A DNA stretch of 64,000 nucleotides from Blastocladiella emersonii ATCC 22665 (Eukaryota > Fungi > Blastocladiomycota): NCBI GenBank assembly GCA_025594325.1, contig JANHCV010000002.1:2777634-2841633 (forward strand). The letters are read 5' to 3'. Below, one piece after another: positions 11,601 through 64,000 of the stretch. Made by a program: the position numbers and the translations under genes. The notes under the pieces are model-generated. The model worked only from the letters and a program-made list of their open reading frames with translations, was not told the DNA's origin and made no database searches. How positions within the stretch are numbered: position 1 is the stretch's first letter; each line of letters begins with the position of its first letter.

Positions 11601-12398
11601 ATCATCGGCTCGACTCGATTCGTCAAGACGTTCCAGGAGACCTAGAGCACCTCCCGGAACCGGCCGGCCGACCGTCCGCTCGGCGTCCTTCAACCAAGGC
11701 CGATTCACCGACACCTCGACTCGCTGCCGCCCTTCGATCCAGCCGTCCGTCCCTCCACGACGCCGAGTCGAGTCAAGTCAAGCAGGGCATGCCGCAACTA
11801 CTCCTACGCCCGGTCGCAACTTCACCGCCGAGTTCACGGCAGGAAGCGCGCGTACCGGCGGCCCAGCTCATTCCCGCGCGGGAGCACGCGCGGAGTGGTC
11901 GTTGCTCATGTCGGTCGAGCCTGTGTCAGTAGTCATTTGTATTTGTATATATTCAGTTTCGATTATCACCAAAGTATTGTCGATGAGCGAGTTTGTGGTC
12001 GCGGTGTCTCCAACACGTGTCGAGGTCGCGTCGCGCCACTCACGTTCACCTGAAACGATACCGTCGTGACGACCGTTCTGAGTCCCGCTGCTCTGTATCA
12101 CCGCCGGGCCACATCGTACGAGCTCTTTGAAGAAGGGAAGCGAGAGTGGACTAAAACGCATGTGCCATGACACAGCGATTACTCCTACTCTCTTTAACCC
12201 GTACGCCGTCGCATCAAGGGCTTCAACGTCGCACGTGCCGGCTCGCTACCCAACGTTCCGCTGGCTTCGTCTTTAAACTTCACTAAGTCGTTCATGTGCG
12301 CCTCTACTCATCAAATAGCTGAGAGTCAACGTCATGCCATTAAAGAATTGGCGACCGGTAGCGTTAGGAACTGCTCCCCTCCGTGCTGGGCTTTCAAC

Positions 12399-21827: not shown

Positions 21828-21917
21828 GAGTGATTCTTTGCAATAAGAGTCGGGTCAAGTGCGTCCAGCTGGGGAGGGGGCAAGCGATGAGCGAGCGGCT
21901 CAGGGACCGCGCCGTGG

Positions 21918-21965
21918 GCGAGCGCCCTGGCGAGCGCCCTGGCGAGCGCCCTGGCGAGCGCCCAG
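21918..21965. repeat. 12-bp tandem repeat (ggcgagcgccct), ~4 copies
   Basis: Direct inspection. Confidence 0.85.
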
Positions 21966-22079
21966 CCGCGCGACGCGAACTCAAACCGCCTCGCGCCGCC
22001 GACGCGGGCTCCGGAAATTCCCGACGTCCCGCACGGCTCCACCTTGCACTCCAGAGCCGCTCCCCGACTCGGCCGCGTC

Positions 22080-33924: not shown

Positions 33925-34069
33925 CGCTTCCCCGGAATAATATGACTACGACCACGTGGTAATCGTTTACTAAATCCTCCAGCCTTCACCCTCAGAACTT
34001 GAATTTTATCCATCAAAGCATTGAGGGCGAGCGCTCAACGGTGGGTGCGTTGCGCGTTAAAGACAAAGT

Positions 34070-37000: not shown

Positions 37001-37156
37001 CCCCCACTTCTTCCCCTTTGCTCCTCGACGTGCGTGGTCCAGGCCTTGCTGCATTGCAGCTCTGCCAGAAAAGGCCGGCGCCTGTCGTAAAGTGGATACT
37101 CTGCTTGCAGGTTACAACCGCTGTTAAAGAATAAATCAAAGATTCCACAAGAAAAA
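34070..37156 (+). mobile_element. 5'-truncated, internally deleted non-LTR retrotransposon: RT(partial)-RNase H-CCHC, 3' UTR, AATAAA, short A tail
   Basis: RAPGPSGITY, MRPITLME, EDKSKAFDTV and GVPQGAVESPLMWSCLYDPLL. RNase H motifs VYTDGS, SSTRAEAWAI, IYSDSQAAI and WVRGHAGVEGNEIADGLA. CPRC..D..HWMIC. ORF stop at 36680, AATAAA at ~37130, tail ...caagaaaaa at 37156. Frameshift at ~34280. RT motifs downstream of YDPLL are missing. Confidence 0.92.
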
Positions 37157-37928
37157 GTTTGAGTACCTTGACAATTATGTACGAGGCTGGTTTACTATCT
37201 TTCCGTTGTCAAATATTTAGTTGGGTCGATACTGTGATTTATGGGTCCCTGGCTAGCTGGACAAGCGTGTAGTCAAAGATTTGAATATGGTTTTGTTCGA
37301 CTACCATGACAATTGTCTACGTGGCTGGTTTGGTACGGCCCTATCATCGGTCAATTCATTGCGTGCATATTGTGATTCGTGGAGGGTCCGATTGGGCCGG
37401 ACATCCCCCTCTCTGCTGTCCAGACTACGTTCCATGAAATACATGATCCATTGCGTGAGCAACGTTCCTAGCTTGCCCGCCCGCATGCGCGCTACGTCCG
37501 CCCACCCACCCACCCACCTAGGCCAGACAGGAAGGAAAGGGGACCCCAAGAGCCCCACGACACCACTTTAGCTCCACTACCACCCGCCAAGGCGCACGCA
37601 GCGACACCCGCAGCCATGCCATGGCGTTGGTGGGTGGATGGTGGCCAGCCAATCCTCATCACGCACGACACGTATGAAGGTCTGCCTGCATCCACCCATC
37701 CATTCATTCAACACACCCTCCCTCACGCACCCCTTCACTCGTGCTGTTTGACAGCCAGCTAGCCAGGTCCTGCTGCTGCTACCTATCTACCCTGCCCGCC
37801 TCCCACGCCCGCCGCGTCCTGAGCCAGGCAGGGCTGTGCTGCGATTAATGGCCGCGGCCAGTCCACGGTATTGGTACCCATGCAGTACGTTCCATGGCCG
37901 CCCGGCCACCCTAGCTTGGTGCTTGTGT

Positions 37929-38006
37929 GTCACTTGGTCACCTTGGTCACCGTGGTCACCTTGGTCACCTTGGTCACTTGGTCACCTTGGTCACTTGGTC
38001 ACTTGG
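37929..38006. repeat. (TTGGTCAC[C])n 8/9-bp microsatellite, present in every 3328-bp unit
   Basis: About 9 copies by direct inspection. Confidence 0.9.
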
Positions 38007-38600
38007 CGCTTGTGATGGAGGTCTAATCCAGGCACGCACGGACACAGGCACGCACGGACACAGGCCCGCACGCCCACACGCTCTCCTGCCAGGAGCATGT
38101 GGTGTGTGGGTCATTCACCATTCAGTTTGTCGTCCCTAGCACTCCTTGGCCCCAGCACTGTCTCCTTCCTGCAGCAGGAGCCCTGCCGCCTCAGCCCTCC
38201 GCAGCCAGCCCTCTGCAGCCCTGTGAAGCAGTACGGCTGCTACGCTGTTTCCAAGGTACGGTGGCCAGGGCGACGCAGGTGCTGTGGTGTTGCTTGCCAC
38301 TTGGCTGGCAACAGGGGCTGGCGCACCCATCAATCAATCAGCGGCACCGGGAGGGCAGGCAGGCGCACCCGTTGGAGCGAGTAGCAAGCCTGGATGATAA
38401 ATCATTGTTGAGTTGAGGACGCCTTGCATGCCTGCCGTTCATGCGAGTGTGTGTGACACCAGGGTGGCCGTTTGCGCCGTGTGCGCACCGCGGGGTGCGT
38501 CGGGCGCTGTGTGCTGTGCGCGCTGCACGGTGCGCGGTGTACGTCCGTCAGCGGGTGAGTGGTTTCACGCGGATAGACAGAGGAGCTGCTCGGAACCCTC

Positions 38601-39254
38601 TTTATTTTGGAACCAATGCATTTATTCCTTAACTGCGGTTGTGAACTGCAACCAGAATATCCACTGTGCAACGGGCAGCAGCCTTTTTGTGGGCAAGCCG
38701 CAGTACGACAAGCCCGGACCGTGCACGTCGAGGAGCATAGGGGGAAGAATTGTGGGAGGAGAGGGGAGTACGAGAGAGATGGGCGAACGAGGCGAAGAGA
38801 GAGCGAGCTCGAGCAGCGAGCTAAGAGAGCGAACGAAGAGCAGTAAAGAGAGACCGAGCAGAGAGACACGCTGGCGTGACCAGCTAGAGCGCGAGGACAT
38901 GCCAATGGACCAGTGGCAGTGCTGTGGTATTGGGCATGGCCTGTGAGGTTCGTCAGATGTTTTTCCATCTTTTTGTGCGGACGTTCTTCTTGTTGCGTTT
39001 CTCTTTATTTTGTTTTTCTCCTTCTTTTTCTTTTTCTTTTGTGCGTCAGCGCCATTCAGTGGCGGATCATGCGTTTCATCGTGGTCAGAACGAGAGAAAG
39101 TGGATGGGTCAGTACCGCGCGCAAACACCTGGTGCCACTGGACTTGCGTCGACTGCGCCGATCCTTGGTCTAGTCACATCACCGAATGTGCCTTGGGGAA
39201 CCGAGCAACCAAAGTCGGACGGAGGGATCTGCAACAAGAGCCGCTTGGGCCGCG
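38601..39254 (-). mobile_element. 654-bp 5'-truncated LINE copy (end of ORF + 3' UTR + A-rich tail) with a 16-bp TSD; repeated in every unit
   Basis: The reverse complement aligns with 36603-37156 (AAQAALVADPSVRLWLLGSPRHIR* versus AAQAALAADPSARLWLLGSPRHILK*; shared acaaccgc.gttaa.gaataaat). It is flanked by the direct repeat GCTGCTCGGAACCCTC at 38585-38600 and 39255-39270. Confidence 0.92.
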
Positions 39255-39545
39255 GCTGCTCGGAACCCTCCTTGGCCCATCATCATGCAGGACTTGGAGT
39301 GGACAGCAGAGCCGGCAGCCAGGAGGAGACTGGTCGTGTATTGACTAACAAAGTCGTCCCAGACTACCTACGAGATAGATAATATCTACTGGGTGGGCGC
39401 TGTCAGTCAGGCTGTCAGTGTGGCAGGCTGCCAGGCTGCCAGGGCTCATCATTCATTCGTTTGTTGGCTGGGACGGCAACCAGAGAGCGCGGGCCCCCAA
39501 TGACTTGCGAGGCGGTGTGGGTGTTCGGATAGCAGGTAGGCAAGG

Positions 39546-39620
39546 TGGCAGGTTGACAGGTTGGCAGGTTGGCAGGCTGGCAGGCTGGCAGGCTGGCAGG
39601 TTGGCAGGCTGGCAGGTTGG
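39546..39620. repeat. (GGCAGGYT)n 8-bp microsatellite, present in every unit
   Basis: About 9 copies by direct inspection. Confidence 0.9.
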
Positions 39621-39713
39621 CTGTTTACTTAGTTGATTGGACCGTGCACTTTGACGACGGGCTCCATTATTAGGGGATCGAAGAGTTGGCTAGTGGAGTG
39701 TGCACAAAGCGGT

Positions 39714-40720
39714 AGATTTGAATATCTGGCGCTTTGGTTCCTCGCCCACCTGGACGTGAGGGTATGCGAAGATTTGGCTGAGTATGGTTATGTTTGAGTA
39801 CCATGACAATTATCAGCGTGGCGGGTTTGATACATCCCGATCGTCAGTCAGGTGTTTTCTTGGTTCAATACTGTGATTTATAGGCCCTTGCCCACCTGGA
39901 CATGGGGCACTCGAAGATTTGACTATGGTTTTGTTTGAGTACCATGACAATTATCTACGTGCCTGGTTTACGATATTTCTTTGGTCAGATATTGCGTTGC
40001 TGTGATACTGTGATTTATGGGTCCCTGGCTAGCTGGACAAGCGGGAAGTGAAAGATTTGAATATGGTTTTGTTTGAGTATCAAGACAATTACCTACGCGG
40101 TCGGTTATATAAACTCATGTGGTCAGATATTTCGTTGGTATGATACTGTGATTTATGGGTGTCCAACCTGCTGGACATGTGGGAAGTCGAAGATTTGAGT
40201 ATGGTTTTGTTTGAGTACCATGACAGTTGCCAGAGTGGCTGGTTTACTATACTTCTATGGTCAGATATACTGTTGCTTTGACGTTACGATTTATGGGTCC
40301 TCAACCAGCTGGACATGCAGGAAAGCAAAGATTTGAATATGGTTTTGATTGAGTACCATGACAATTATCCGCGTGGCTGTTTTACCATATTTCTGTCGTC
40401 AGATACTTTGTTGGTTCGATACTGTGATTTATGGGTCCCTGGCCAGCTGGACATGCGGGAAGTCAAGGTTTTGAATATGGTTTTGTTTGAGTACCATGAC
40501 AATTATGTACGAGGCTGGTTTACTATCTTTCCGTTGTCAAATATTTAGTTGGGTCGATACTGTGATTTATGGGTCCCTGGCTAGCTGGACAAGCGTGTAG
40601 TCAAAGATTTGAATATGGTTTTGTTCGACTACCATGACAATTGTCTACGTGGCTGGTTTGGTACGGCCCTATCATCGGTCAATTCATTGCGTGCATATTG
40701 TGATTCGTGGAGGGTCCGAT
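39714..40720. repeat. Nested array of ~7 diverged AT-rich 138-bp monomers, present in every unit
   Basis: The motif (g/a)aagatttgaatatggttttgtttgagtaccatgacaatt recurs at 39768, 39913, 40051, 40189, 40327, 40465 and 40603 (exact 138-bp spacing for the last six), plus a truncated copy at ~39714. Confidence 0.95.
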
Positions 40721-43700
40721 TGGGCCGGACATCCCCCTCTCTGCTGTCCAGACTACGTTCCATGAAATACATGATCCATTGCGTGAGCAACGTTCCTAGC
40801 TTGCCCGCCCGCATGCGCGCTACGTCCGCCCACCCACCCACCCACCTAGGCCAGACAGGAAGGAAAGGGGACCCCAAGAGCCCCACGACACCACTTTAGC
40901 TCCACTACCACCCGCCAAGGCGCACGCAGCGACACCCGCAGCCATGCCATGGCGTTGGTGGGTGGATGGTGGCCAGCCAATCCTCATCACGCACGACACG
41001 TATGAAGGTCTGCCTGCATCCACCCATCCATTCATTCAACACACCCTCCCTCACGCACCCCTTCACTCGTGCTGTTTGACAGCCAGCTAGCCAGGTCCTG
41101 CTGCTGCTACCTATCTACCCTGCCCGCCTCCCACGCCCGCCGCGTCCTGAGCCAGGCAGGGCTGTGCTGCGATTAATGGCCGCGGCCAGTCCACGGTAGT
41201 GGTACCCATGCAGTACGTTCCATGGCCGCCCGGCCACCCTAGCTTGGTGCTTGTGTGTCACTTGGTCACCTTGGTCACCGTGGTCACCTTGGTCACCTTG
41301 GTCACTTGGTCACCTTGGTCACTTGGTCACTTGGCGCTTGTGATGGAGGTCTAATCCAGGCACGCACGGACACAGGCACGCACGGACACAGGCCCGCACG
41401 CCCACACGCTCTCCTGCCAGGAGCATGTGGTGTGTGGGTCATTCACCATTCAGTTTGTCGTCCCTAGCACTCCTTGGCCCCAGCACTGTCTCCTTCCTGC
41501 AGCAGGAGCCCTGCCGCCTCAGCCCTCCGCAGCCAGCCCTCTGCAGCCCTGTGAAGCAGTACGGCTGCTACGCTGTTTCCAAGGTACGGTGGCCAGGGCG
41601 ACGCAGGTGCTGTGGTGTTGCTTGCCACTTGGCTGGCAACAGGGGCTGGCGCACCCATCAATCAATCAACGGCACCGGGAGGGCAGGCAGGCGCACCCGT
41701 TGGAGCGAGTAGCAAGCCTGGATGATAAATCATTGTTGAGTTGAGGACGCCTTGCATGCCTGCCGTTCATGCGAGTGTGTGTGACACCAGGGTGGCCGTT
41801 TGCGCCGTGTGCGCACCGCGGGGTGCGTCGGGCGCTGTGTGCTGTGCGCGCTGCACGGTGCGCGGTGTACGTCCGTCAGCGGGTGAGTGGTTTCACGCGG
41901 ATAGACAGAGGAGCTGCTCGGAACCCTCTTTATTTTGGAACCAATGCATTTATTCCTTAACTGCGGTTGTGAACTGCAACCAGAATATCCACTGTGCAAC
42001 GGGCAGCAGCCTTTTTGTGGGCAAGCCGCAGTACGACAAGCCCGGACCGTGCACGTCGAGGAGCATAGGGGGAAGAATTGTGGGAGGAGAGGGGAGTACG
42101 AGAGAGATGGGCGAACGAGGCGAAGAGAGAGCGAGCTCGAGCAGCGAGCTAAGAGAGCGAACGAAGAGCAGTAAAGAGAGACCGAGCAGAGAGACACGCT
42201 GGCGTGACCAGCTAGAGCGCGAGGACATGCCAATGGACCAGTGGCAGTGCTGTGGTATTGGGCATGGCCTGTGAGGTTCGTCAGATGTTTTTCCATCTTT
42301 TTGTGCGGACGTTCTTCTTGTTGCGTTTCTCTTTATTTTGTTTTTCTCCTTCTTTTTCTTTTTCTTTTGTGCGTCAGCGCCATTCAGTGGCGGATCATGC
42401 GTTTCATCGTGGTCAGAACGAGAGAAAGTGGATGGGTCAGTACCGCGCGCAAACACCTGGTGCCACTGGACTTGCGTCGACTGCGCCGATCCTTGGTCTA
42501 GTCACATCACCGAATGTGCCTTGGGGAACCGAGCAACCAAAGTCGGACGGAGGGATCTGCAACAAGAGCCGCTTGGGCCGCGGCTGCTCGGAACCCTCCT
42601 TGGCCCATCATCATGCAGGACTTGGAGTGGACAGCAGAGCCGGCAGCCAGGAGGAGACTGGTCGTGTATTGACTAACAAAGTCGTCCCAGACTACCTACG
42701 AGATAGATAATATCTACTGGGTGGGCGCTGTCAGTCAGGCTGTCAGTGTGGCAGGCTGCCAGGCTGCCAGGGCTCATCATTCATTCGTTTGTTGGCTGGG
42801 ACGGCAACCAGAGAGCGCGGGCCCCCAATGACTTGCGAGGCGGTGTGGGTGTTCGGATAGCAGGTAGGCAAGGTGGCAGGTTGACAGGTTGGCAGGTTGG
42901 CAGGCTGGCAGGCTGGCAGGCTGGCAGGTTGGCAGGCTGGCAGGTTGGCTGTTTACTTAGTTGATTGGACCGTGCACTTTGACGACGGGCTCCATTATTA
43001 GGGGATCGAAGAGTTGGCTAGTGGAGTGTGCACAAAGCGGTAGATTTGAATATCTGGCGCTTTGGTTCCTCGCCCACCTGGACGTGAGGGTATGCGAAGA
43101 TTTGGCTGAGTATGGTTATGTTTGAGTACCATGACAATTATCAGCGTGGCGGGTTTGATACGTCCCGATCGTCAGTCAGGTGTTTTCTTGGTTCAATACT
43201 GTGATTTATAGGCCCTTGCCCACCTGGACATGGGGCACTCGAAGATTTGACTATGGTTTTGTTTGAGTACCATGACAATTATCTACGTGCCTGGTTTACG
43301 ATATTTCTTTGGTCAGATATTGCGTTGCTGTGATACTGTGATTTATGGGTCCCTGGCTAGCTGGACAAGCGGGAAGTGAAAGATTTGAATATGGTTTTGT
43401 TTGAGTATCAAGACAATTACCTACGCGGTCGGTATTATATAAACTCATGTGGTCAGATATTTCGTTGGTATGATACTGTGATTTATGGGTGTCCAACCTG
43501 CTGGACATGTGGGAAGTCGAAGATTTGAGTATGGTTTTGTTTGAGTACCATGACAGTTGCCAGAGTGGCTGGTTTACTATACTTCTATGGTCAGATATAC
43601 TGTTGCTTTGACGTTACGATTTATGGGTCCTCAACCAGCTGGACATGCAGGAAAGCAAAGATTTGAATATGGTTTTGATTGAGTACCATGACAATTATCC

Positions 43701-46700
43701 GCGTGGCTGTTTTACCATATTTCTGTCGTCAGATACTTTGTTGGTTCGATACTGTGATTTATGGGTCCCTGGCCAGCTGGACATGCGGGAAGTCAAGGTT
43801 TTGAATATGGTTTTGTTTGAGTACCATGACAATTATGTACGAGGCTGGTTTACTATCTTTCCGTTGTCAAATATTTAGTTGGGTCGATACTGTGATTTAT
43901 GGGTCCCTGGCTAGCTGGACAAGCGTGTAGTCAAAGATTTGAATATGGTTTTGTTCGACTACCATGACAATTGTCTACGTGGCTGGTTTGGTACGGCCCT
44001 ATCATCGGTCAATTCATTGCGTGCATATTGTGATTCGTGGAGGGTCCGATTGGGCCGGACATCCCCCTCTCTGCTGTCCAGACTACGTTCCATGAAATAC
44101 ATGATCCATTGCGTGAGCAACGTTCCTAGCTTGCCCGCCCGCATGCGCGCTACGTCCGCCCACCCACCCACCCACCTAGGCCAGACAGGAAGGAAAGGGG
44201 ACCCCAAGAGCCCCACGACACCACTTTAGCTCCACTACCACCCGCCAAGGCGCACGCAGCGACACCCGCAGCCATGCCATGGCGTTGGTGGGTGGATGGT
44301 GGCCAGCCAATCCTCATCACGCACGACACGTATGAAGGTCTGCCTGCATCCACCCATCCATTCATTCAACACACCCTCCCTCACGCACCCCTTCACTCGT
44401 GCTGTTTGACAGCCAGCTAGCCAGGTCCTGCTGCTGCTACCTATCTACCCTGCCCGCCTCCCACGCCCGCCGCGTCCTGAGCCAGGCAGGGCTGTGCTGC
44501 GATTAATGGCCGCGGCCAGTCCACGGTATTGGTACCCATGCAGTACGTTCCATGGCCGCCCGGCCACCCTAGCTTGGTGCTTGTGTGTCACTTGGTCACC
44601 TTGGTCACCGTGGTCACCTTGGTCACCTTGGTCACTTGGTCACCTTGGTCACTTGGTCACTTGGCGCTTGTGATGGAGGTCTAATCCAGGCACGCACGGA
44701 CACAGGCACGCACGGACACAGGCCCGCACGCCCACACGCTCTCCTGCCAGGAGCATGTGGTGTGTGGGTCATTCACCATTCAGTTTGTCGTCCCTAGCAC
44801 TCCTTGGCCCCAGCACTGTCTCCTTCCTGCAGCAGGAGCCCTGCCGCCTCAGCCCTCCGCAGCCAGCCCTCTGCAGCCCTGTGAAGCAGTACGGCTGCTA
44901 CGCTGTTTCCAAGGTACGGTGGCCAGGGCGACGCAGGTGCTGTGGTGTTGCTTGCCACTTGGCTGGCAACAGGGGCTGGCGCACCCATCAATCAATCAGC
45001 GGCACCGGGAGGGCAGGCAGGCGCACCCGTTGGAGCGAGTAGCAAGCCTGGATGATAAATCATTGTTGAGTTGAGGACGCCTTGCATGCCTGCCGTTCAT
45101 GCGAGTGTGTGTGACACCAGGGTGGCCGTTTGCGCCGTGTGCGCACCGCGGGGTGCGTCGGGCGCTGTGTGCTGTGCGCGCTGCACGGTGCGCGGTGTAC
45201 GTCCGTCAGCGGGTAAGTGGTTTCACGCGGATAGACCGAGGAGCTGCTCGGAACCCTCTTTATTTTGGAACCAATGCATTTATTCCTTAACTGCGGTTGT
45301 GAACTGCAACCAGAATATCCACTGTGCAACGGGCAGCAGCCTTTTTGTGGGCAAGCCGCAGTACGACAAGCCCGGACCGTGCACGTCGAGGAGCATAGGG
45401 GGAAGAATTGTGGGAGGAGAGGGGAGTACGAGAGAGATGGGCGAACGAGGCGAAGAGAGAGCGAGCTCGAGCAGCGAGCTAAGAGAGCGAACGAAGAGCA
45501 GTAAAGAGAGACCGAGCAGAGAGACACGCTGGCGTGACCAGCTAGAGCGCGAGGACATGCCAATGGACCAGTGGCAGTGCTGTGGTATTGGGCATGGCCT
45601 GTGAGGTTCGTCAGATGTTTTTCCATCTTTTTGTGCGGACGTTCTTCTTGTTGCGTTTCTCTTTATTTTGTTTTTCTCCTTCTTTTTCTTTTTCTTTTGT
45701 GCGTCAGCGCCATTCAGTGGCGGATCATGCGTTTCATCGTGGTCAGAACGAGAGAAAGTGGATGGGTCAGTACCGCGCGCAAACACCTGGTGCCACTGGA
45801 CTTGCGTCGACTGCGCCGATCCTTGGTCTAGTCACATCACCGAATGTGCCTTGGGGAACCGAGCAACCAAAGTCGGACGGAGGGATCTGCAACAAGAGCC
45901 GCTTGGGCCGCGGCTGCTCGGAACCCTCCTTGGCCCATCATCATGCAGGACTTGGAGTGGACAGCAGAGCCGGCAGCCAGGAGGAGACTGGTCGTGTATT
46001 GACTAACAAAGTCGTCCCAGACTACCTACGAGATAGATAATATCTACTGGGTGGGCGCTGTCAGTCAGGCTGTCAGTGTGGCAGGCTGCCAGGCTGCCAG
46101 GGCTCATCATTCATTCGTTTGTTGGCTGGGACGGCAACCAGAGAGCGCGGGCCCCCAATGACTTGCGAGGCGGTGTGGGTGTTCGGATAGCAGGTAGGCA
46201 AGGTGGCAGGTTGACAGGTTGGCAGGTTGGCAGGCTGGCAGGCTGGCAGGCTGGCAGGTTGGCAGGCTGGCAGGTTGGCTGTTTACTTAGTTGATTGGAC
46301 CGTGCACTTTGACGACGGGCTCCATTATTAGGGGATCGAAGAGTTGGCTAGTGGAGTGTGCACAAAGCGGTAGATTTGAATATCTGGCGCTTTGGTTCCT
46401 CGCCCACCTGGACGTGAGGGTATGCGAAGATTTGGCTGAGTATGGTTATGTTTGAGTACCATGACAATTATCAGCGTGGCGGGTTTGATACGTCCCGATC
46501 GTCAGTCAGGTGTTTTCTTGGTTCAATACTGTGATTTATAGGCCCTTGCCCACCTGGACATGGGGCACTCGAAGATTTGACTATGGTTTTGTTTGAGTAC
46601 CATGACAATTATCTACGTGCCTGGTTTACGATATTTCTTTGGTCAGATATTGCGTTGCTGTGATACTGTGATTTATGGGTCCCTGGCTAGCTGGACAAGC

Positions 46701-49700
46701 GGGAAGTGAAAGATTTGAATATGGTTTTGTTTGAGTATCAAGACAATTACCTACGCGGTCGGTTATATATACTCATGTGGTCAGATATTTCGTTGGTATG
46801 ATACTGTGATTTATGGGTGTCCAACCTGCTGGACATGTGGGAAGTCGAAGATTTGAGTATGGTTTTGTTTGAGTACCATGACAGTTGCCAGAGTGGCTGG
46901 TTTACTATACTTCTATGGTCAGATATACTGTTGCTTTGACGTTACGATTTATGGGTCCTCAACCAGCTGGACATGCAGGAAAGCAAAGATTTGAATATGG
47001 TTTTGATTGAGTACCATGACAATTATCCGCGTGGCTGTTTTACCATATTTCTGTCGTCAGATACTTTGTTGGTTCGATACTGTGATTTATGGGTCCCTGG
47101 CCAGCTGGACATGCGGGAAGTCAAGGTTTTGAATATGGTTTTGTTTGAGTACCATGACAATTATGTACGAGGCTGGTTTACTATCTTTCCGTTGTCAAAT
47201 ATTTAGTTGGGTCGATACTGTGATTTATGGGTCCCTGGCTAGCTGGACAAGCGTGTAGTCAAAGATTTGAATATGGTTTTGTTCGACTACCATGACAATT
47301 GTCTACGTGGCTGGTTTGGTACGGCCCTATCATCGGTCAATTCATTGCGTGCGTATTGTGATTCGTGGAGGGTCCGATTGGGCCGGACATCCCCCTCTCT
47401 GCTGTCCAGACTACGTTCCATGAAATACATGATCCATTGCGTGAGCAACGTTCCTAGCTTGCCCGCCCGCATGCGCGCTACGTCCGCCCACCCACCCACC
47501 CACCTAGGCCAGACAGGAAGGAAAGGGGACCCCAAGAGCCCCACGACACCACTTTAGCTCCACTACCACCCGCCAAGGCGCACGCAGCGACACCCGCAGC
47601 CATGCCATGGCGTTGGTGGGTGGATGGTGGCCAGCCAATCCTCATCACGCACGACACGTATGAAGGTCTGCCTGCATCCACCCATCCATTCATTCAACAC
47701 ACCCTCCCTCACGCACCCCTTCACTCGTGCTGTTTGACAGCCAGCTAGCCAGGTCCTGCTGCTGCTACCTATCTACCCTGCCCGCCTCCCACGCCCGCCG
47801 CGTCCTGAGCCAGGCAGGGCTGTGCTGCGATTAATGGCCGCGGCCAGTCCACGGTATTGGTACCCATGCAGTACGTTCCATGGCCGCCCGGCCACCCTAG
47901 CTTGGTGCTTGTGTGTCACTTGGTCACCTTGGTCACCGTGGTCACCTTGGTCACCTTGGTCACTTGGTCACCTTGGTCACTTGGTCACTTGGCGCTTGTG
48001 ATGGAGGTCTAATCCAGGCACGCACGGACACAGGCACGCACGGACACAGGCCCGCACGCCCACACGCTCTCCTGCCAGGAGCATGTGGTGTGTGGGTCAT
48101 TCACCATTCAGTTTGTCGTCCCTAGCACTCCTTGGCCCCAGCACTGTCTCCTTCCTGCAGCAGGAGCCCTGCCGCCTCAGCCCTCCGCAGCCAGCCCTCT
48201 GCAGCCCTGTGAAGCAGTACGGCTGCTACGCTGTTTCCAAGGTACGGTGGCCAGGGCGACGCAGGTGCTGTGGTGTTGCTTGCCACTTGGCTGGCAACAG
48301 GGGCTGGCGCACCCATCAATCAATCAACGGCACCGGGAGGGCAGGCAGGCGCACCCGTTGGAGCGAGTAGCAAGCCTGGATGATAAATCATTGTTGAGTT
48401 GAGGACGCCTTGCATGCCTGCCGTTCATGCGAGTGTGTGTGACACCAGGGTGGCCGTTTGCGCCGTGTGCGCACCGCGGGGTGCGTCGGGCGCTGTGTGC
48501 TGTGCGCGCTGCACGGTGCGCGGTGTACGTCCGTCAGCGGGTAAGTGGTTTCACGCGGATAGACCGAGGAGCTGCTCGGAACCCTCTTTATTTTGGAACC
48601 AATGCATTTATTCCTTAACTGCGGTTGTGAACTGCAACCAGAATATCCACTGTGCAACGGGCAGCAGCCTTTTTGTGGGCAAGCCGCAGTACGACAAGCC
48701 CGGACCGTGCACGTCGAGGAGCATAGGGGGAAGAATTGTGGGAGGAGAGGGGAGTACGAGAGAGATGGGCGAACGAGGCGAAGAGAGAGCGAGCTCGAGC
48801 AGCGAGCTAAGAGAGCGAACGAAGAGCAGTAAAGAGAGACCGAGCAGAGAGACACGCTGGCGTGACCAGCTAGAGCGCGAGGACATGCCAATGGACCAGT
48901 GGCAGTGCTGTGGTATTGGGCATGGCCTGTGAGGTTCGTCAGATGTTTTTCCATCTTTTTGTGCGGACGTTCTTCTTGTTGCGTTTCTCTTTATTTTGTT
49001 TTTCTCCTTCTTTTTCTTTTTCTTTTGTGCGTCAGCGCCATTCAGTGGCGGATCATGCGTTTCATCGTGGTCAGAACGAGAGAAAGTGGATGGGTCAGTA
49101 CCGCGCGCAAACACCTGGTGCCACTGGACTTGCGTCGACTGCGCCGATCCTTGGTCTAGTCACATCACCGAATGTGCCTTGGGGAACCGAGCAACCAAAG
49201 TCGGACGGAGGGATCTGCAACAAGAGCCGCTTGGGCCGCGGCTGCTCGGAACCCTCCTTGGCCCATCATCATGCAGGACTTGGAGTGGACAGCAGAGCCG
49301 GCAGCCAGGAGGAGACTGGTCGTGTATTGACTAACAAAGTCGTCCCAGACTACCTACGAGATAGATAATATCTACTGGGTGGGCGCTGTCAGTCAGGCTG
49401 TCAGTGTGGCAGGCTGCCAGGCTGCCAGGGCTCATCATTCATTCGTTTGTTGGCTGGGACGGCAACCAGAGAGCGCGGGCCCCCAATGACTTGCGAGGCG
49501 GTGTGGGTGTTCGGATAGCAGGTAGGCAAGGTGGCAGGTTGACAGGTTGGCAGGTTGGCAGGCTGGCAGGCTGGCAGGCTGGCAGGTTGGCAGGCTGGCA
49601 GGTTGGCTGTTTACTTAGTTGATTGGACCGTGCACTTTGACGACGGGCTCCATTATTAGGGGATCGAAGAGTTGGCTAGTGGAGTGTGCACAAAGCGGTA

Positions 49701-55700: not shown

Positions 55701-58700
55701 GTGGCGGATCATGCGTTTCATCGTGGTCAGAACGAGAGAAAGTGGATGGGTCAGTACCGCGCGCAAACACCTGGTGCCACTGGACTTGCGTCGACTGCGC
55801 CGATCCTTGGTCTAGTCACATCACCGAATGTGCCTTGGGGAACCGAGCAACCAAAGTCGGACGGAGGGATCTGCAACAAGAGCCGCTTGGGCCGCGGCTG
55901 CTCGGAACCCTCCTTGGCCCATCATCATGCAGGACTTGGAGTGGACAGCAGAGCCGGCAGCCAGGAGGAGACTGGTCGTGTATTGACTAACAAAGTCGTC
56001 CCAGACTACCTACGAGATAGATAATATCTACTGGGTGGGCGCTGTCAGTCAGGCTGTCAGTGTGGCAGGCTGCCAGGCTGCCAGGGCTCATCATTCATTC
56101 GTTTGTTGGCTGGGACGGCAACCAGAGAGCGCGGGCCCCCAATGACTTGCGAGGCGGTGTGGGTGTTCGGATAGCAGGTAGGCAAGGTGGCAGGTTGACA
56201 GGTTGGCAGGTTGGCAGGCTGGCAGGCTGGCAGGCTGGCAGGTTGGCAGGCTGGCAGGTTGGCTGTTTACTTAGTTGATTGGACCGTGCACTTTGACGAC
56301 GGGCTCCATTATTAGGGGATCGAAGAGTTGGCTAGTGGAGTGTGCACAAAGCGGTAGATTTGAATATCTGGCGCTTTGGTTCCTTGCCCACCTGGACGTG
56401 AGGGTATGCGAAGATTTGGCTGAGTATGGTTATGTTTGAGTACCATGACAATTATCAGCGTGGCGGGTTTGATACATCCCGATCGTCAGTCAGGTGTTTT
56501 CTTGGTTCAATACTGTGATTTATAGGCCCTTGCCCACCTGGACATGGGGCACTCGAAGATTTGACTATGGTTTTGTTTGAGTACCATGACAATTATCTAC
56601 GTGCCTGGTTTACGATATTTCTTTGGTCAGATATTGCGTTGCTGTGATACTGTGATTTATGGGTCCCTGGCTAGCTGGACAAGCGGGAAGTGAAAGATTT
56701 GAATATGGTTTTGTTTGAGTATCAAGACAATTACCTACGCGGTCGGTTATATATACTCATGTGGTCAGATATTTCGTTGGTTTGATACTGTGATTTATGG
56801 GTGTCCAACCTGCTGGACATGTGGGAAGTCGAAGATTTGAGTATGGTTTTGTTTGAGTACCATGACAGTTGCCAGAGTGGCTGGTTTACTATACTTCTAT
56901 GGTCAGATATACTGTTGCTTTGACGTTACGATTTATGGGTCCTCAACCAGCTGGACATGCAGGAAAGCAAAGATTTGAATATGGTTTTGATTGAGTACCA
57001 TGACAATTATCCGCGTGGCTGTTTTACCATATTTCTGTCGTCAGATACTTTGTTGGTTCGATACTGTGATTTATGGGTCCCTGGCCAGCTGGACATGCGG
57101 GAAGTCAAGGTTTTGAATATGGTTTTGTTTGAGTACCATGACAATTATGTACGAGGCTGGTTTACTATCTTTCCGTTGTCAAATATTTAGTTGGGTCGAT
57201 ACTGTGATTTATGGGTCCCTGGCTAGCTGGACAAGCGTGTAGTCAAAGATTTGAATATGGTTTTGTTCGACTACCATGACAATTGTCTACGTGGCTGGTT
57301 TGGTACGGCCCTATCATCGGTCAATTCATTGCGTGCGTATTGTGATTCGTGGAGGGTCCGATTGGGCCGGACATCCCCCTCTCTGCTGTCCAGACTACGT
57401 TCCATGAAATACATGATCCATTGCGTGAGCAACGTTCCTAGCTTGCCCGCCCGCATGCGCGCTACGTCCGCCCACCCACCCACCCACCTAGGCCAGACAG
57501 GAAGGAAAGGGGACCCCAAGAGCCCCACGACACCACTTTAGCTCCACTACCACCCGCCAAGGCGCACGCAGCGACACCCGCAGCCATGCCATGGCGTTGG
57601 TGGGTGGATGGTGGCCAGCCAATCCTCATCACGCACGACACGTATGAAGGTCTGCCTGCATCCACCCATCCATTCATTCAACACACCCTCCCTCACGCAC
57701 CCCTTCACTCGTGCTGTTTGACAGCCAGCTAGCCAGGTCCTGCTGCTGCTACCTATCTACCCTGCCCGCCTCCCACGCCCGCCGCGTCCTGAGCCAGGCA
57801 GGGCTGTGCTGCGATTAATGGCCGCGGCCAGTCCACGGTATTGGTACCCATGCAGTACGTTCCATGGCCGCCCGGCCACCCTAGCTTGGTGCTTGTGTGT
57901 CACTTGGTCACCTTGGTCACCGTGGTCACCTTGGTCACCTTGGTCACTTGGTCACCTTGGTCACTTGGTCACTTGGCGCTTGTGATGGAGGTCTAATCCA
58001 GGCACGCACGGACACAGGCACGCACGGACACAGGCCCGCACGCCCACACGCTCTCCTGCCAGGAGCATGTGGTGTGTGGGTCATTCACCATTCAGTTTGT
58101 CGTCCCTAGCACTCCTTGGCCCCAGCACTGTCTCCTTCCTGCAGCAGGAGCCCTGCCGCCTCAGCCCTCCGCAGCCAGCCCTCTGCAGCCCTGTGAAGCA
58201 GTACGGCTGCTACGCTGTTTCCAAGGTACGGTGGCCAGGGCGACGCAGGTGCTGTGGTGTTGCTTGCCACTTGGCTGGCAACAGGGGCTGGCGCACCCAT
58301 CAATCAATCAACGGCACCGGGAGGGCAGGCAGGCGCACCCGTTGGAGCGAGTAGCAAGCCTGGATGATAAATCATTGTTGAGTTGAGGACGCCTTGCATG
58401 CCTGCCGTTCATGCGAGTGTGTGTGACACCAGGGTGGCCGTTTGCGCCGTGTGCGCACCGCGGGGTGCGTCGGGCGCTGTGTGCTGTGCGCGCTGCACGG
58501 TGCGCGGTGTACGTCCGTCAGCGGGTAAGTGGTTTCACGCGGATAGACCGGGGAGCTGCTCGGAACCCTCTTTATTTTGGAACCAATGCATTTATTCCTT
58601 AACTGCGGTTGTGAACTGCAACCAGAATATCCACTGTGCAACGGGCAGCAGCCTTTTTGTGGGCAAGCCGCAGTACGACAAGCCCGGACCGTGCACGTCG

Positions 58701-61700
58701 AGGAGCATAGGGGGAAGAATTGTGGGAGGAGAGGGGAGTACGAGAGAGATGGGCGAACGAGGCGAAGAGAGAGCGAGCTCGAGCAGCGAGCTAAGAGAGC
58801 GAACGAAGAGCAGTAAAGAGAGACCGAGCAGAGAGACACGCTGGCGTGACCAGCTAGAGCGCGAGGACATGCCAATGGACCAGTGGCAGTGCTGTGGTAT
58901 TGGGCATGGCCTGTGAGGTTCGTCAGATGTTTTTCCATCTTTTTGTGCGGACGTTCTTCTTTTTGCGTTTCTCTTTATTTTGTTTTTCTCCTTCTTTTTC
59001 TTTTTCTTTTGTGCGTCAGCGCCATTCAGTGGCGGATCATGCGTTTCATCGTGGTCAGAACGAGAGAAAGTGGATGGGTCAGTACCGCGCGCAAACACCT
59101 GGTGCCACTGGACTTGCGTCGACTGCGCCGATCCTTGGTCTAGTCACATCACCGAATGTGCCTTGGGGAACCGAGCAACCAAAGTCGGACGGAGGGATCT
59201 GCAACAAGAGCCGCTTGGGCCGCGGCTGCTCGGAACCCTCCTTGGCCCATCATCATGCAGGACTTGGAGTGGACAGCAGAGCCGGCAGCCAGGAGGAGAC
59301 TGGTCGTGTATTGACTAACAAAGTCGTCCCAGACTACCTACGAGATAGATAATATCTACTGGGTGGGCGCTGTCAGTCAGGCTGTCAGTGTGGCAGGCTG
59401 CCAGGCTGCCAGGGCTCATCATTCATTCGTTTGTTGGCTGGGACGGCAACCAGAGAGCGCGGGCCCCCAATGACTTGCGAGGCGGTGTGGGTGTTCGGAT
59501 AGCAGGTAGGCAAGGTGGCAGGTTGACAGGTTGGCAGGTTGGCAGGCTGGCAGGCTGGCAGGCTGGCAGGTTGGCAGGCTGGCAGGTTGGCTGTTTACTT
59601 AGTTGATTGGACCGTGCACTTTGACGACGGGCTCCATTATTAGGGGATCGAAGAGTTGGCTAGTGGAGTGTGCACAAAGCGGTAGATTTGAATATCTGGC
59701 GCTTTGGTTCCTCGCCCACCTGGACGTGAGGGTATGCGAAGATTTGGCTGAGTATGGTTATGTTTGAGTACCATGACAATTATCAGCGTGGCGGGTTTGA
59801 TACATCCCGATCGTCAGTCAGGTGTTTTCTTGGTTCAATACTGTGATTTATAGGCCCTTGCCCACCTGGACATGGGGCACTCGAAGATTTGACTATGGTT
59901 TTGTTTGAGTACCATGACAATTATCTACGTGCCTGGTTTACGATATTTCTTTGGTCAGATATTGCGTTGCTGTGATACTGTGATTTATGGGTCCCTGGCT
60001 AGCTGGACAAGCGGGAAGTGAAAGATTTGAATATGGTTTTGTTTGAGTATCAAGACAATTACCTACGCGGTCGGTTATATATACTCATGTGGTCAGATAT
60101 TTCGTTGGTATGATACTGTGATTTATGGGTGTCCAACCTGCTGGACATGTGGGAAGTCGAAGATTTGAGTATGGTTTTGTTTGAGTACCATGACAGTTGC
60201 CAGAGTGGCTGGTTTACTATACTTCTATGGTCAGATATACTGTTGCTTTGACGTTACGATTTATGGGTCCTCAACCAGCTGGACATGCAGGAAAGCAAAG
60301 ATTTGAATATGGTTTTGATTGAGTACCATGACAATTATCCGCGTGGCTGTTTTACCATATTTCTGTCGTCAGATACTTTGTTGGTTCGATACTGTGATTT
60401 ATGGGTCCCTGGCCAGCTGGACATGCGGGAAGTCAAGGTTTTGAATATGGTTTTGTTTGAGTACCATGACAATTATGTACGAGGCTGGTTTACTATCTTT
60501 CCGTTGTCAAATATTTAGTTGGGTCGATACTGTGATTTATGGGTCCCTGGCTAGCTGGACAAGCGTGTAGTCAAAGATTTGAATATGGTTTTGTTCGACT
60601 ACCATGACAATTGTCTACGTGGCTGGTTTGGTACGGCCCTATCATCGGTCAATTCATTGCGTGCGTATTGTGATTCGTGGAGGGTCCGATTGGGCCGGAC
60701 ATCCCCCTCTCTGCTGTCCAGACTACGTTCCATGAAATACATGATCCATTGCGTGAGCAACGTTCCTAGCTTGCCCGCCCGCATGCGCGCTACGTCCGCC
60801 CACCCACCCACCCACCTAGGCCAGACAGGAAGGAAAGGGGACCCCAAGAGCCCCACGACACCACTTTAGCTCCACTACCACCCGCCAAGGCGCACGCAGC
60901 GACACCCGCAGCCATGCCATGGCGTTGGTGGGTGGATGGTGGCCAGCCAATCCTCATCACGCACGACACGTATGAAGGTCTGCCTGCATCCACCCATCCA
61001 TTCATTCAACACACCCTCCCTCACGCACCCCTTCACTCGTGCTGTTTGACAGCCAGCTAGCCAGGTCCTGCTGCTGCTACCTATCTACCCTGCCCGCCTC
61101 CCACGCCCGCCGCGTCCTGAGCCAGGCAGGGCTGTGCTGCGATTAATGGCCGCGGCCAGTCCACGGTATTGGTACCCATGCAGTACGTTCCATGGCCGCC
61201 CGGCCACCCTAGCTTGGTGCTTGTGTGTCACTTGGTCACCTTGGTCACCGTGGTCACCTTGGTCACCTTGGTCACTTGGTCACCTTGGTCACTTGGTCAC
61301 TTGGCGCTTGTGATGGAGGTCTAATCCAGGCACGCACGGACACAGGCACGCACGGACACAGGCCCGCACGCCCACACGCTCTCCTGCCAGGAGCATGTGG
61401 TGTGTGGGTCATTCACCATTCAGTTTGTCGTCCCTAGCACTCCTTGGCCCCAGCACTGTCTCCTTCCTGCAGCAGGAGCCCTGCCGCCTCAGCCCTCCGC
61501 AGCCAGCCCTCTGCAGCCCTGTGAAGCAGTACGGCTGCTACGCTGTTTCCAAGGTACGGTGGCCAGGGCGACGCAGGTGCTGTGGTGTTGCTTGCCACTT
61601 GGCTGGCAACAGGGGCTGGCGCACCCATCAATCAATCAACGGCACCGGGAGGGCAGGCAGGCGCACCCGTTGGAGCGAGTAGCAAGCCTGGATGATAAAT

Positions 61701-64000
61701 CATTGTTGAGTTGAGGACGCCTTGCATGCCTGCCGTTCATGCGAGTGTGTGTGACACCAGGGTGGCCGTTTGCGCCGTGTGCGCACCGCGGGGTGCGTCG
61801 GGCGCTGTGTGCTGTGCGCGCTGCACGGTGCGCGGTGTACGTCCGTCAGCGGGTGAAGTGGTTTCACGCGGATAGACCAGAGGGGAGCTGCTCGGAACCC
61901 TCTTTATTTTGGAACCAATGCATTTATTCCTTAACTGCGGTTGTGAACTGCAACCAGAATATCCACTGTGCAACGGGCAGCAGCCTTTTTGTGGGCAAGC
62001 CGCAGTACGACAAGCCCGGACCGTGCACGTCGAGGAGCATAGGGGGAAGAATTGTGGGAGGAGAGGGGAGTACGAGAGAGATGGGCGAACGAGGCGAAGA
62101 GAGAGCGAGCTCGAGCAGCGAGCTAAGAGAGCGAACGAAGAGCAGTAAAGAGAGACCGAGCAGAGAGACACGCTGGCGTGACCAGCTAGAGCGCGAGGAC
62201 ATGCCAATGGACCAGTGGCAGTGCTGTGGTATTGGGCATGGCCTGTGAGGTTCGTCAGATGTTTTTCCATCTTTTTGTGCGGACGTTCTTCTTGTTTTTG
62301 CGTTTCTCTTTATTTTGTTTTTCTCCTTCTTTTTCTTTTTCTTTTGTGCGTCAGCGCCATTCAGTGGCGGATCATGCGTTTCATCGTGGTCAGAACGAGA
62401 GAAAGTGGATGGGTCAGTACCGCGCGCAAACACCTGGTGCCACTGGACTTGCGTCGACTGCGCCGATCCTTGGTCTAGTCACATCACCGAATGTGCCTTG
62501 GGGAACCGAGCAACCAAAGTCGGACGGAGGGATCTGCAACAAGAGCCGCTTGGGCCGCGGCTGCTCGGAACCCTCCTTGGCCCATCATCATGCAGGACTT
62601 GGAGTGGACAGCAGAGCCGGCAGCCAGGAGGAGACTGGTCGTGTATTGACTAACAAAGTCGTCCCAGACTACCTACGAGATAGATAATATCTACTGGGTG
62701 GGCGCTGTCAGTCAGGCTGTCAGTGTGGCAGGCTGCCAGGCTGCCAGGGCTCATCATTCATTCGTTTGTTGGCTGGGACGGCAACCAGAGAGCGCGGGCC
62801 CCCAATGACTTGCGAGGCGGTGTGGGTGTTCGGATAGCAGGTAGGCAAGGTGGCAGGTTGACAGGTTGGCAGGTTGGCAGGCTGGCAGGCTGGCAGGCTG
62901 GCAGGTTGGCAGGCTGGCAGGTTGGCTGTTTACTTAGTTGATTGGACCGTGCACTTTGACGACGGGCTCCATTATTAGGGGATCGAAGAGTTGGCTAGTG
63001 GAGTGTGCACAAAGCGGTAGATTTGAATATCTGGCGCTTTGGTTCCTCGCCCACCTGGACGTGAGGGTATGCGAAGATTTGGCTGAGTATGGTTATGTTT
63101 GAGTACCATGACAATTATCAGCGTGGCGGGTTTGATACATCCCGATCGTCAGTCAGGTGTTTTCTTGGTTCAATACTGTGATTTATAGGCCCTTGCCCAC
63201 CTGGACATGGGGCACTCGAAGATTTGACTATGGTTTTGTTTGAGTACCATGACAATTATCTACGTGCCTGGTTTACGATATTTCTTTGGTCAGATATTGC
63301 GTTGCTGTGATACTGTGATTTATGGGTCCCTGGCTAGCTGGACAAGCGGGAAGTGAAAGATTTGAATATGGTTTTGTTTGAGTATCAAGACAATTACCTA
63401 CGCGGTCGGTTATATATACTCATGTGGTCAGATATTTCGTTGGTATGATACTGTGATTTATGGGTGTCCAACCTGCTGGACATGTGGGAAGTCGAAGATT
63501 TGAGTATGGTTTTGTTTGAGTACCATGACAGTTGCCAGAGTGGCTGGTTTACTATACTTCTATGGTCAGATATACTGTTGCTTTGACGTTACGATTTATG
63601 GGTCCTCAACCAGCTGGACATGCAGGAAAGCAAAGATTTGAATATGGTTTTGATTGAGTACCATGACAATTATCCGCGTGGCTGTTTTACCATATTTCTG
63701 TCGTCAGATACTTTGTTGGTTCGATACTGTGATTTATGGGTCCCTGGCCAGCTGGACATGCGGGAAGTCAAGGTTTTGAATATGGTTTTGTTTGAGTACC
63801 ATGACAATTATGTACGAGGCTGGTTTACTATCTTTCCGTTGTCAAATATTTAGTTGGGTCGATACTGTGATTTATGGGTCCCTGGCTAGCTGGACAAGCG
63901 TGTAGTCAAAGATTTGAATATGGTTTTGTTCGACTACCATGACAATTGTCTACGTGGCTGGTTTGGTACGGCCCTATCATCGGTCAATTCATTGCGTGCG

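What the first reader, a model, noticed from the sequence alone, without database searches (positions are those of the whole stretch)
37157..64000. Composite 3328-bp macrosatellite abutting a gene-dense arm: possible centromeric/subtelomeric heterochromatin boundary
Seen: at least 8 near-identical units begin about 3.2 kb after a housekeeping-type bZIP gene, with no rRNA, histone or snRNA gene recognised in the unit. Each unit is a frozen composite of old satellite monomers, microsatellites and a TE insertion that was later amplified as a block. Established: kb-scale higher-order repeats built from TE-containing units typify centromeres and subtelomeres in plants and animals. Inference: such arrays are little described in early-diverging fungi, so this may be a structural chromosome domain.
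Basis: partly seen in the sequence, partly recalled or inferred. Interest (0 to 1): 0.8.

Follow-up and report, generated by a model that had tools for sequence, protein, structure and literature searches.

The report
High-copy LINE-tagged macrosatellite array edge
A water fungus (probably Blastocladiella emersonii) carries a gene-free 3.3-kb repeat, present roughly a thousand times or more in its DNA and under-represented in the assembly; here the repeat meets ordinary genes through a broken jumping gene, and whether it marks a chromosome end or a centromere is still open.

Summary
From 37157 to the window end lie 7 complete and 2 partial head-to-tail units of 3328 bp, 99.6-100% identical. 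Each unit is a 2658-bp base repeat plus a 654-bp antisense LINE 3' end with a perfect 16-bp target duplication. The base repeat holds six old 138-bp monomers (63-86% alike), several microsatellites and unique DNA. No known RNA family (even at E<=1), tRNA, Pfam domain or long reading frame lies in the unit.

It is not an assembly duplication. Summed word depth in contigs of three public DNA runs is about 1,800-9,000 times that of the single-copy flank (rough). The LINE-free form is also abundant, so the assembly under-represents the repeat.

The array starts abruptly, mid-monomer, at the 3' end of a 5'-truncated LINE relic without target duplication, 3.2 kb past a bZIP gene. CpG is depleted in the unit (0.75 against 1.20 in the flank).

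"Centromere or subtelomere" could not be decided. No telomere repeat is in the window. An unchecked scan note puts a telomere-capped array of 2857-bp units 2.76 Mb upstream on the same piece. I lean to a subtelomere-type block (0.35) over a centromere (0.3).

The scan has met this repeat family before on other pieces of this genome (s1-265236 and others).

The parts
37157..64000 (.). Tandem array of 3328-bp units: partial unit 37157-38341, full units starting at 38342, 41670, 45000, 48328, 51656, 54984 and 58312, partial unit 61640-64000. It runs off the window.
34146..37156 (+). Boundary LINE relic. It is 5'-truncated, with an RT fragment (34220-34942), a frame break, an RNase H reading frame (34755-36680) and a 3' UTR with an A-rich end at 37156. 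It has no target-site duplication. Its left flank is single-copy DNA and its right flank is the array, entered mid-monomer.
   Evidence: single-copy contigs of three runs all stop at 34145
45259..45912 (-). Antisense LINE 3' fragment (654 bp: the last ~80 nt of the reading frame plus the 3' UTR) in a representative unit. The same fragment sits at the same place in every unit, for example 38601-39254.
   Evidence: (83% and 71% identity to 36603-37154)
45243..45258 (.). Left copy of the perfect 16-bp target-site duplication GCTGCTCGGAACCCTC. The right copy is at 45913-45928. The pair occurs in all 8 units.
   Evidence: the empty-site joint that skips 670 bp with 16 shared letters is seen in reads
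46190..46279 (+). G-rich 8/16-bp microsatellite (GCAGGTTG / GCAGGCTG)n
46393..47317 (+). Nested sub-array of 138-bp monomers: six full monomers 63-86% alike, with decayed edge monomers. It is 43% GC.
47915..47992 (+). 9-bp microsatellite (GTCACCTTG)n, followed by (CAGGCACGCACGGACA)n at 48015-48058
32071..33924 (+). bZIP gene, the last single-copy gene before the array
   Evidence: single-copy depth

Best explanation
This is one edge of a very high-copy, non-coding macrosatellite. Shown: a 2658-bp base repeat was hit once by a LINE, which left a 654-bp 3' fragment and a 16-bp target duplication. The base repeat consists of six old 138-bp monomers, microsatellites and unique DNA. The tagged 3328-bp unit was then multiplied as a block. 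Neighbouring units share their few variants, as expected from growth and homogenisation by unequal sister-chromatid exchange or gene conversion in steps of one or two units. Inferred: the array is silent, methylation-prone chromatin that serves as a structural block, not a gene cluster. Its edge was made by a second LINE event. Most likely a LINE insertion joined its 5' end to a different broken end (an insertion-linked deletion); alternatively two LINE copies recombined. Either would explain the missing target duplication and the undecayed array edge. My committed guess for its chromosomal role is a subtelomere-type array on the distal side of this arm, ordered genes - TE - array - (telomere). 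This order matches the Sultan arrays of Chlamydomonas.
For: Array, unit anatomy and target duplication. No RNA family, tRNA, Pfam domain or open frame over 129 codons in the base unit. Summed word depth is 8.8/40.9/130 in the flank against about 22,000/376,000/230,000 in the array, in three runs. The LINE-tagged part reaches 20-40% of that, and the empty-site joint is present. CpG o/e is 0.75 in the unit (0.47-0.76 outside the LINE fragment) against 1.20 in the flank, with a TpG/CpA excess. The boundary LINE lacks a target duplication. For the subtelomere guess: an unchecked scan note reports a telomere-capped array of 2857-bp units at the start of this same piece, 2.76 Mb upstream. That unit size falls within this family's reported range of 2.56-3.33 kb. 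The genome paper needed the assembly graph to link telomeres to ten contigs. Chlamydomonas subtelomeres have the order telomere - array - spacer - TEs - genes.
Against: No telomere repeat or degenerate telomere run is in the window, and the array runs off the window. It is not known whether the 2857-bp telomere-capped array belongs to this family. About 1,800 or more copies (some 5 Mb) is large for subtelomeres and typical of centromeric satellites, as are nucleosome-sized monomers. The depth figures are sums over contigs, and the tool itself warns that they are not copy numbers. CpG depletion could partly reflect microsatellite composition and the coding bias of the flank. No RNA data were available, so silence is assumed.
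Confidence: 0.35

Rival explanations
1. Centromeric or pericentromeric satellite. The arrays, one per chromosome with chromosome-specific unit lengths, would be the sites of kinetochore assembly. The HiFi assembly would break there, giving arm-sized contigs with a telomere at one end and the array at the other.
For: The copy number is very high, of order 10^3 units, about 0.4-0.5 Mb per chromosome if there are about 10 chromosomes. Diverged 138-bp monomers are frozen inside near-identical larger units. LINEs have invaded the array repeatedly. The assembly has ten contigs with a telomere at only one end. The array lies at least 2.76 Mb from the telomere-capped end of its piece, in an assembly with an N50 of 2.02 Mb. 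Other pieces carry family members with different unit lengths, and LINEs at array edges (unchecked). Mucor centromeres are flanked by Grem-LINE1 elements.
Against: There is no TE-rich or decayed pericentric transition. A homogeneous array stands 3.2 kb from an ordinary gene. The monomers have no excess dyad symmetry, and they make up only about a third of the base unit. No satellite centromere turned up in my paper searches on fungi, which were narrow. No positional or chromatin evidence is available.
Confidence: 0.3
2. An interstitial 'selfish' satellite block with no positional role. The repeat would spread and contract by unequal exchange and be scattered at several arbitrary loci, tolerated as heterochromatin.
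For: The edge is abrupt and made by a rearrangement, next to normal genes. Reads show many length variants (joints skipping 75-185 bp, or replacing 90 bp, at depths of 9,000-12,000 in run X3). No functional motif was found.
Against: A multi-megabase amount of one family in a genome of about 35-50 Mb usually sits at centromeres or chromosome ends. Scan notes place arrays at window-filling scale on several pieces.
Confidence: 0.25
3. A tandem array of an unrecognised transcription unit, either a lineage-specific non-coding RNA or a spliced orphan gene, amplified for dosage.
For: The architecture resembles an rDNA spacer (sub-repeats, microsatellites and GC-rich unique parts). This genome holds other amplified RNA-gene arrays according to scan notes. 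No RNA run could be examined.
Against: There is no Rfam hit even at E<=1, no tRNA (37) and no Pfam hit. The longest stop-free stretch in the base unit is 129 codons. All frames of the 138-bp sub-array carry 7-17 stops. The unit tolerates a 654-bp LINE insertion in 20-40% of copies, and other indel variants.
Confidence: 0.08
4. Assembly artefact: one or two real copies over-expanded by the assembler.
For: The units are near-identical and the array runs to the window end.
Against: Word depth in the array is thousands of times that of the single-copy flank in three runs of the sample. Structured variants are shared by neighbouring units. The error runs the other way, because the assembly holds too few copies.
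Confidence: 0.02

Closest known systems
Sultan subtelomeric arrays of Chlamydomonas reinhardtii (Chaux-Jukic et al. 2021, PMC8287924)
   Same: Species-specific, non-coding, heterochromatic tandem arrays. They are homogenised within an array and differ between chromosome ends. The order is array - G-rich microsatellite/TEs - genes.
   Different: Telomere adjacency is not shown here. Here the G-rich microsatellite lies inside every unit. By my recollection Sultan units are shorter (under 1 kb) and arrays hold tens of copies; here the unit is 2.66-3.33 kb with about 10^3 copies in total.
Higher-order-repeat centromeric satellites (primate alpha satellite, plant CentO/pAL1-type)
   Same: Diverged, nucleosome-sized monomers are frozen in a larger unit that is near-identical between copies. 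Arrays reach hundreds of kb. Retroelements invade them.
   Different: Monomers make up only about 0.9 kb of the 2.66-kb base unit, and the rest is unique DNA and microsatellites. No CENP-A data, binding box or dyad symmetry was found.
Human D4Z4 macrosatellite (3.3-kb unit, 4q35/10q26 subtelomeres; from my own knowledge)
   Same: A 3.3-kb composite unit built from older repeat types, arrayed head to tail near a chromosome end, heterochromatic.
   Different: D4Z4 carries the DUX4 reading frame and is CpG-rich. This unit has no reading frame and is CpG-poor relative to its genome.
Mucor circinelloides centromeres flanked by Grem-LINE1 (bioRxiv 10.1101/706580)
   Same: An early-diverging fungus in which LINEs mark the borders of a specialised chromosome domain.
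   Different: As I recall that work, Mucor centromeres are short and mosaic, without a satellite. Here there is a multi-megabase satellite and no kinetochore evidence.
TE-tagged or TE-derived satellites (review PMC9659126); L1-insertion-associated deletions in mammals (from my own knowledge)
   Same: A single TE insertion is co-amplified with its host repeat. A LINE joins two unrelated sequences without a target duplication.
   Different: None in kind; only the organism and the repeat family are new.

Membership tests
Macrosatellite / satellite DNA | Head-to-tail tandem units of at least 1 kb with high identity | tested here: met
   period 3328 bp, 99.6-100% identity
Macrosatellite / satellite DNA | High copy number in the organism's DNA, not only in the assembly | tested here: met
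   summed word depth about 1,800-9,000 times the single-copy flank in three runs of one sample (rough, order of magnitude only)
Macrosatellite / satellite DNA | No gene in the unit | tested here: met
   An unknown RNA cannot be excluded.
Higher-order repeat (HOR) satellite | Monomers diverged within a unit but near-identical between units | tested here: met
   (63-86% identity within a unit) against (over 99.6% between units)
Higher-order repeat (HOR) satellite | Unit composed wholly of monomers of one family | tested here: not met
   monomers fill only unit positions ~1394-2318, and the rest is unique DNA, microsatellites and a LINE fragment
Centromeric satellite | Bound by CENP-A or the kinetochore; one array per chromosome | not testable with these tools
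   No ChIP, Hi-C or whole-contig view was available.
Centromeric satellite | Dyad symmetry or non-B DNA, or a protein-binding box, in the monomers | tested here: not met
   DNA folding z-scores from -0.1 to +1.2 against shuffles; no notable inverted repeat
Subtelomeric repeat array | Array adjoins the telomere repeat (AAACCT/AGGTTT in this species) | tested here: inconclusive
   none in the window, but the array runs off its end. One search is an unchecked note of a telomere-capped 2857-bp array at the other end of the piece.
rDNA or other tandem RNA-gene array (5S, snRNA, tRNA, spliced leader) | A recognisable RNA gene in each unit | tested here: not met
Non-LTR retrotransposon insertion by target-primed reverse transcription (the fragment inside each unit) | 3' end of the element present, 5' truncation, flanking target-site duplication, empty site exists | tested here: met
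   empty-site joint and loose ends
Non-LTR retrotransposon insertion by target-primed reverse transcription (the boundary LINE 34146-37156) | Flanking target-site duplication | tested here: not met
   the flanks are unrelated, so the junction needs a rearrangement

The most novel reading that the evidence does not exclude
The 138-bp-monomer macrosatellite family could be the centromere DNA of Blastocladiella. It would then be the first satellite, higher-order-repeat type centromere in the fungal kingdom, with chromosome-specific unit variants and LINE-marked borders. That would place animal- and plant-style centromeres near the base of the fungi.
Probability: 0.3. Interest if true: 0.85.

Novelty: new member of a known kind. 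Interest (0 to 1): 0.5.

Why it matters
Fungal genomes are usually thought to be poor in satellite DNA. Nothing on chromosome architecture in Blastocladiomycota turned up in my searches, and the genome paper for this species mentions neither satellites nor centromeres. A single non-coding repeat family that may account for several megabases would explain two things about the HiFi assembly: why it stops at 21 contigs, and why only 12 of 42 contig ends carry telomeres. The estimate rests on about 1,800 copies in the run that looks like the HiFi data. In that run the single-copy depth is 130, against a reported mean of about 190. The family also gives a concrete probe for locating centromeres or subtelomeres in a zoosporic fungus. 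The LINE tag and the LINE-made edge give datable markers for how such arrays grow and move.

Tried and rejected
- **Known RNA genes.** Rfam at gathering score over the whole window, Rfam at E<=1 on 1.3 units, and ARAGORN all found nothing.
- **Protein coding.** Every unit reading frame of at least 80 aa was scanned against Pfam and none had a real hit. The 138-bp monomers are not an open 46-codon repeat, since every frame holds 7-17 stops.
- **Origin of the unit from neighbouring DNA.** blastn and tblastx against 1-37156 find only the LINE tail.
- **Telomere-like runs.** None, even with 2 mismatches in 12.
- **Dyad symmetry or hairpins.** None in the monomers and no large inverted repeat in the unit.
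- **Relatives elsewhere.** Two conserved monomer cores scanned against the metagenome contigs gave 0 hits.
- **Locating the window in its contig.**
  - Three exact-product look-ups failed.
  - The big protein word search with the bZIP protein gave nothing at E<=1e-10.
  - The paper's supplements are not held.
  - The findings search by sequence was blank, which means nothing.
- **RNA evidence.** No RNA run holds the stretch.
- **Literature.** Searches for Blastocladiella satellite DNA, gamma-particle DNA and Blastocladiomycota centromeres gave nothing.
Full report
**1. The observation**

Tandem Repeats Finder finds the same 881-bp sub-array of 138-bp monomers eight times, spaced 3328 bp apart with single spacings of 3330 and 3335. 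BLAST of one unit (45000-48327) against the window gives full-length head-to-tail matches starting at 38342, 41670, 45000, 48328, 51656, 54984 and 58312. A partial first unit lies at 37157-38341 (unit positions 2144-3328) and a partial last unit at 61640-64000, which runs off the window. All are 99.6-100% identical.

An alignment of the units has only about 16 variable columns, and neighbours share their variants. U1 resembles U2, U3 is identical to U4, U5 resembles U6, and U6 to U8 share a change. This is the pattern of a real array that grows by local duplication, not of assembler noise.

**2. Anatomy of the unit**

- Every unit holds two perfect copies of a 16-bp word (GCTGCTCGGAACCCTC), 670 bp apart.
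- Between the two copies lie 654 bp that match, in reverse orientation, a LINE that sits just left of the array. The match covers the last ~80 nt of its reading frame (83% identity) and its 3' UTR (71% identity).
- The unit is therefore a 2658-bp base repeat plus one 5'-truncated LINE insertion with its target-site duplication.
- The base repeat contains:
  - unique GC-rich DNA;
  - a G-rich 8/16-bp microsatellite;
  - six full 138-bp monomers that are only 63-86% alike, with decayed monomers at both edges, 43% GC;
  - a (CCCA)n run, a 9-bp microsatellite and a 16-bp microsatellite.

**3. What the unit does not contain**

- No Rfam family at gathering score in the whole window, and none at E<=1 in 1.3 units.
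- No tRNA.
- No Pfam domain in any reading frame of at least 80 aa.
- The longest stop-free stretch in the circularised base unit is 129 codons.
- Every frame of the 138-bp sub-array has 7-17 stops, so the idea of a decayed 46-aa protein repeat finds no support.
- There is no large inverted repeat, and the monomers fold no better than shuffled sequence.

**4. Copy number in public reads**

Only contigs of four DNA runs of one sample were available, and no RNA run. The single-copy flank (33501-34145) lies on one long contig per run, with word depths of 8.8, 40.9 and 130.3. In all three runs that contig stops at 34145, exactly where the LINE begins.

| Region | Depth relative to the flank |
|---|---|
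| LINE body | about 6-11 times |
| Array outside the monomers, run X3 | about 1,800 times |
| Array outside the monomers, run X1 | about 2,500 times |
| Array outside the monomers, run X2 | about 9,000 times |

The bins inside the LINE fragment reach only 20-40% of their neighbours' depth.

Contigs that skip exactly 670 bp with 16 shared letters show that the LINE-free unit is also abundant, as do loose ends that carry the sequence upstream of the left duplication. Further joints reveal length variants of the unit. They also reveal a second insertion of the same LINE subfamily at the place corresponding to 37387.

The tool warns that summed contig depth is not a copy number, and run X2 may be skewed by GC bias, so I take only the order of magnitude. 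There are about 10^3 units or more, several megabases in all, of which roughly a quarter to a third carry the LINE tag. If anything the assembly holds too few copies.

This fits the genome paper. It reports 247 contigs purged to 21, and a mean coverage of about 190x (8,400x divided by 44), against a single-copy depth of 130 in the run that looks like the HiFi data. Identifying that run as the HiFi data is my inference.

**5. The boundary**

The 3.2 kb between the bZIP gene (frame ends at 33924) and the array is a LINE relic at 34146-37156. It has an RT fragment, a frame break, an RNase H frame, a 3' UTR and an A-rich end.

Its last base abuts the array in the middle of the sixth 138-bp monomer. 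Its truncated 5' end abuts unique DNA, and the two flanks share no duplication. The partial first unit differs from the inner units at only 3 of 1185 positions, so there is no decayed transition zone.

A plain insertion cannot give this picture. The simplest readings are a LINE insertion into the array whose 5' end was joined to another broken end (an insertion-linked deletion), or recombination between two LINE copies. This is inference. The reads shown do not include a contig spanning 37156/37157, so the junction rests on the assembly alone.

A second, related LINE relic (42% identical in RT) lies at about 21.8-23.6 kb. Scan notes report LINEs at array edges on two other pieces (unchecked).

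**6. Composition**

| Region | CpG observed/expected | TpG+CpA observed/expected |
|---|---|---|
| Left flank | 1.20 | 1.05 |
| Boundary LINE | 1.09 | 1.12 |
| LINE fragment inside the unit | 1.00 | 1.13 |
| Whole unit | 0.75 | 1.33 |
| Unit, most non-LINE parts | 0.47-0.76 | 1.25-1.78 |

This fits long-term cytosine methylation of the old repeat and a younger LINE tag. The microsatellites and the coding bias of the flank also contribute, so it is suggestive only.

**7. Organism and place**

Other agents of the scan name the genome Blastocladiella emersonii. The scan's 21 pieces and 538 windows of 64 kb match the published 21 contigs and 34.27 Mb. I did not verify the species independently.

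The paper reports the telomere motif AAACCT at both ends of one contig and, through the assembly graph, at one end of ten more. It mentions no satellite or centromere.

An unchecked first-reader note places a telomere-capped array of 2857-bp units at the first 18.7 kb of this same piece, 2,758,853 letters before this window. The array here is therefore at least 2.76 Mb from that end, in an assembly with an N50 of 2.02 Mb. The window's start is not on any round grid. Under the usual tiling schemes that would put it at, or within about 0.3 Mb of, the contig's other end. This is a guess about the scan's layout, not a result.

**8. Centromere, subtelomere or neither**

For a subtelomere:
- A similar-sized array is capped by a telomere at the other end of the piece. 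Whether it is the same family is unknown.
- The order genes - TE - array matches Chlamydomonas subtelomeres.
- The transition to genes is abrupt.
- The genome authors had difficulty linking telomeres to contigs.

For a centromere:
- The amount is multi-megabase.
- Nucleosome-sized monomers are frozen in larger units.
- Unit lengths differ between pieces (2.56, 2.65, 2.79, 3.12 and 3.33 kb according to the notes).
- LINEs have invaded repeatedly.
- Ten contigs have a telomere at only one end.

Nothing in the window decides between them. There is no telomere repeat, no dyad symmetry, and no chromatin or position data. My odds are:
- subtelomere-type: 0.35
- centromeric: 0.30
- positionless interstitial block: 0.25
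- unknown transcription unit: 0.08
- artefact: 0.02

**9. Novelty**

Composite macrosatellites, TE-tagged satellites and LINE-made junctions are known kinds in animals, plants and algae. This repeat family appears undescribed. Two monomer cores have no match in the metagenome contigs, and literature searches found nothing on satellites or centromeres in Blastocladiomycota.

The scan has already met the family on other pieces. One follow-up (s1-265236) reached the same reading of a LINE-tagged 2.65-kb repeat. This window adds four things:
- an array edge;
- the read-based abundance;
- the CpG contrast;
- the distance to a telomere-capped end.

Noticed in passing
window 37381-37388 (reads only): Contigs of three runs join the array at about 37387 to the antisense 3' end of the same LINE subfamily (as at 38601), through a short T-rich filler. 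This is a second, independent LINE insertion in other copies of the satellite. Its depth in run X1 is about 30-65 times the single-copy flank.
   Followed up: partly
window 37388-37479, 37584-37770, 37861-37946 (reads only): High-depth contigs (9,000-12,000 in run X3) skip or replace 75-185 bp of the unit. These are length variants of the family that are not present in this window's array, and may be the source of the other unit lengths noted elsewhere in the genome.
   Followed up: no
window 21830-23650: A second LINE relic whose RT is 42% identical in protein to the boundary LINE and has no DNA-level similarity to it. That makes two LINE relics within 17 kb of the array edge.
   Followed up: partly
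window 32071-33924: The 617-aa bZIP protein is long and low in complexity outside its C-terminal bZIP domain. It found no relative at E<=1e-10 in the 5.8-billion-protein word search, and its exact product is not on record. The proteome of this organism seems to be absent from those collections.
   Followed up: partly
window 27069-29561 (- strand): An RSN1/OSCA-type calcium-dependent channel gene is split into two adjacent reading frames (27993-29561 and 27069-27968). This is probably an intron or a frame break.
   Followed up: no
window 2000-6500: A very GC-rich stretch (68-73%) has long overlapping reading frames on both strands (for example 2836-4593 on the - strand and 2848-4413 on the + strand). 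Most are likely composition artefacts around one real gene.
   Followed up: no
window 33501-34145 against the whole run: The single-copy word depth is 130 in the deepest run, against the published mean coverage of about 190x. This suggests that a quarter or more of the read mass comes from sequence that the 34.27-Mb assembly collapses or purged (satellite, rDNA, tRNA arrays, mtDNA).
   Followed up: no
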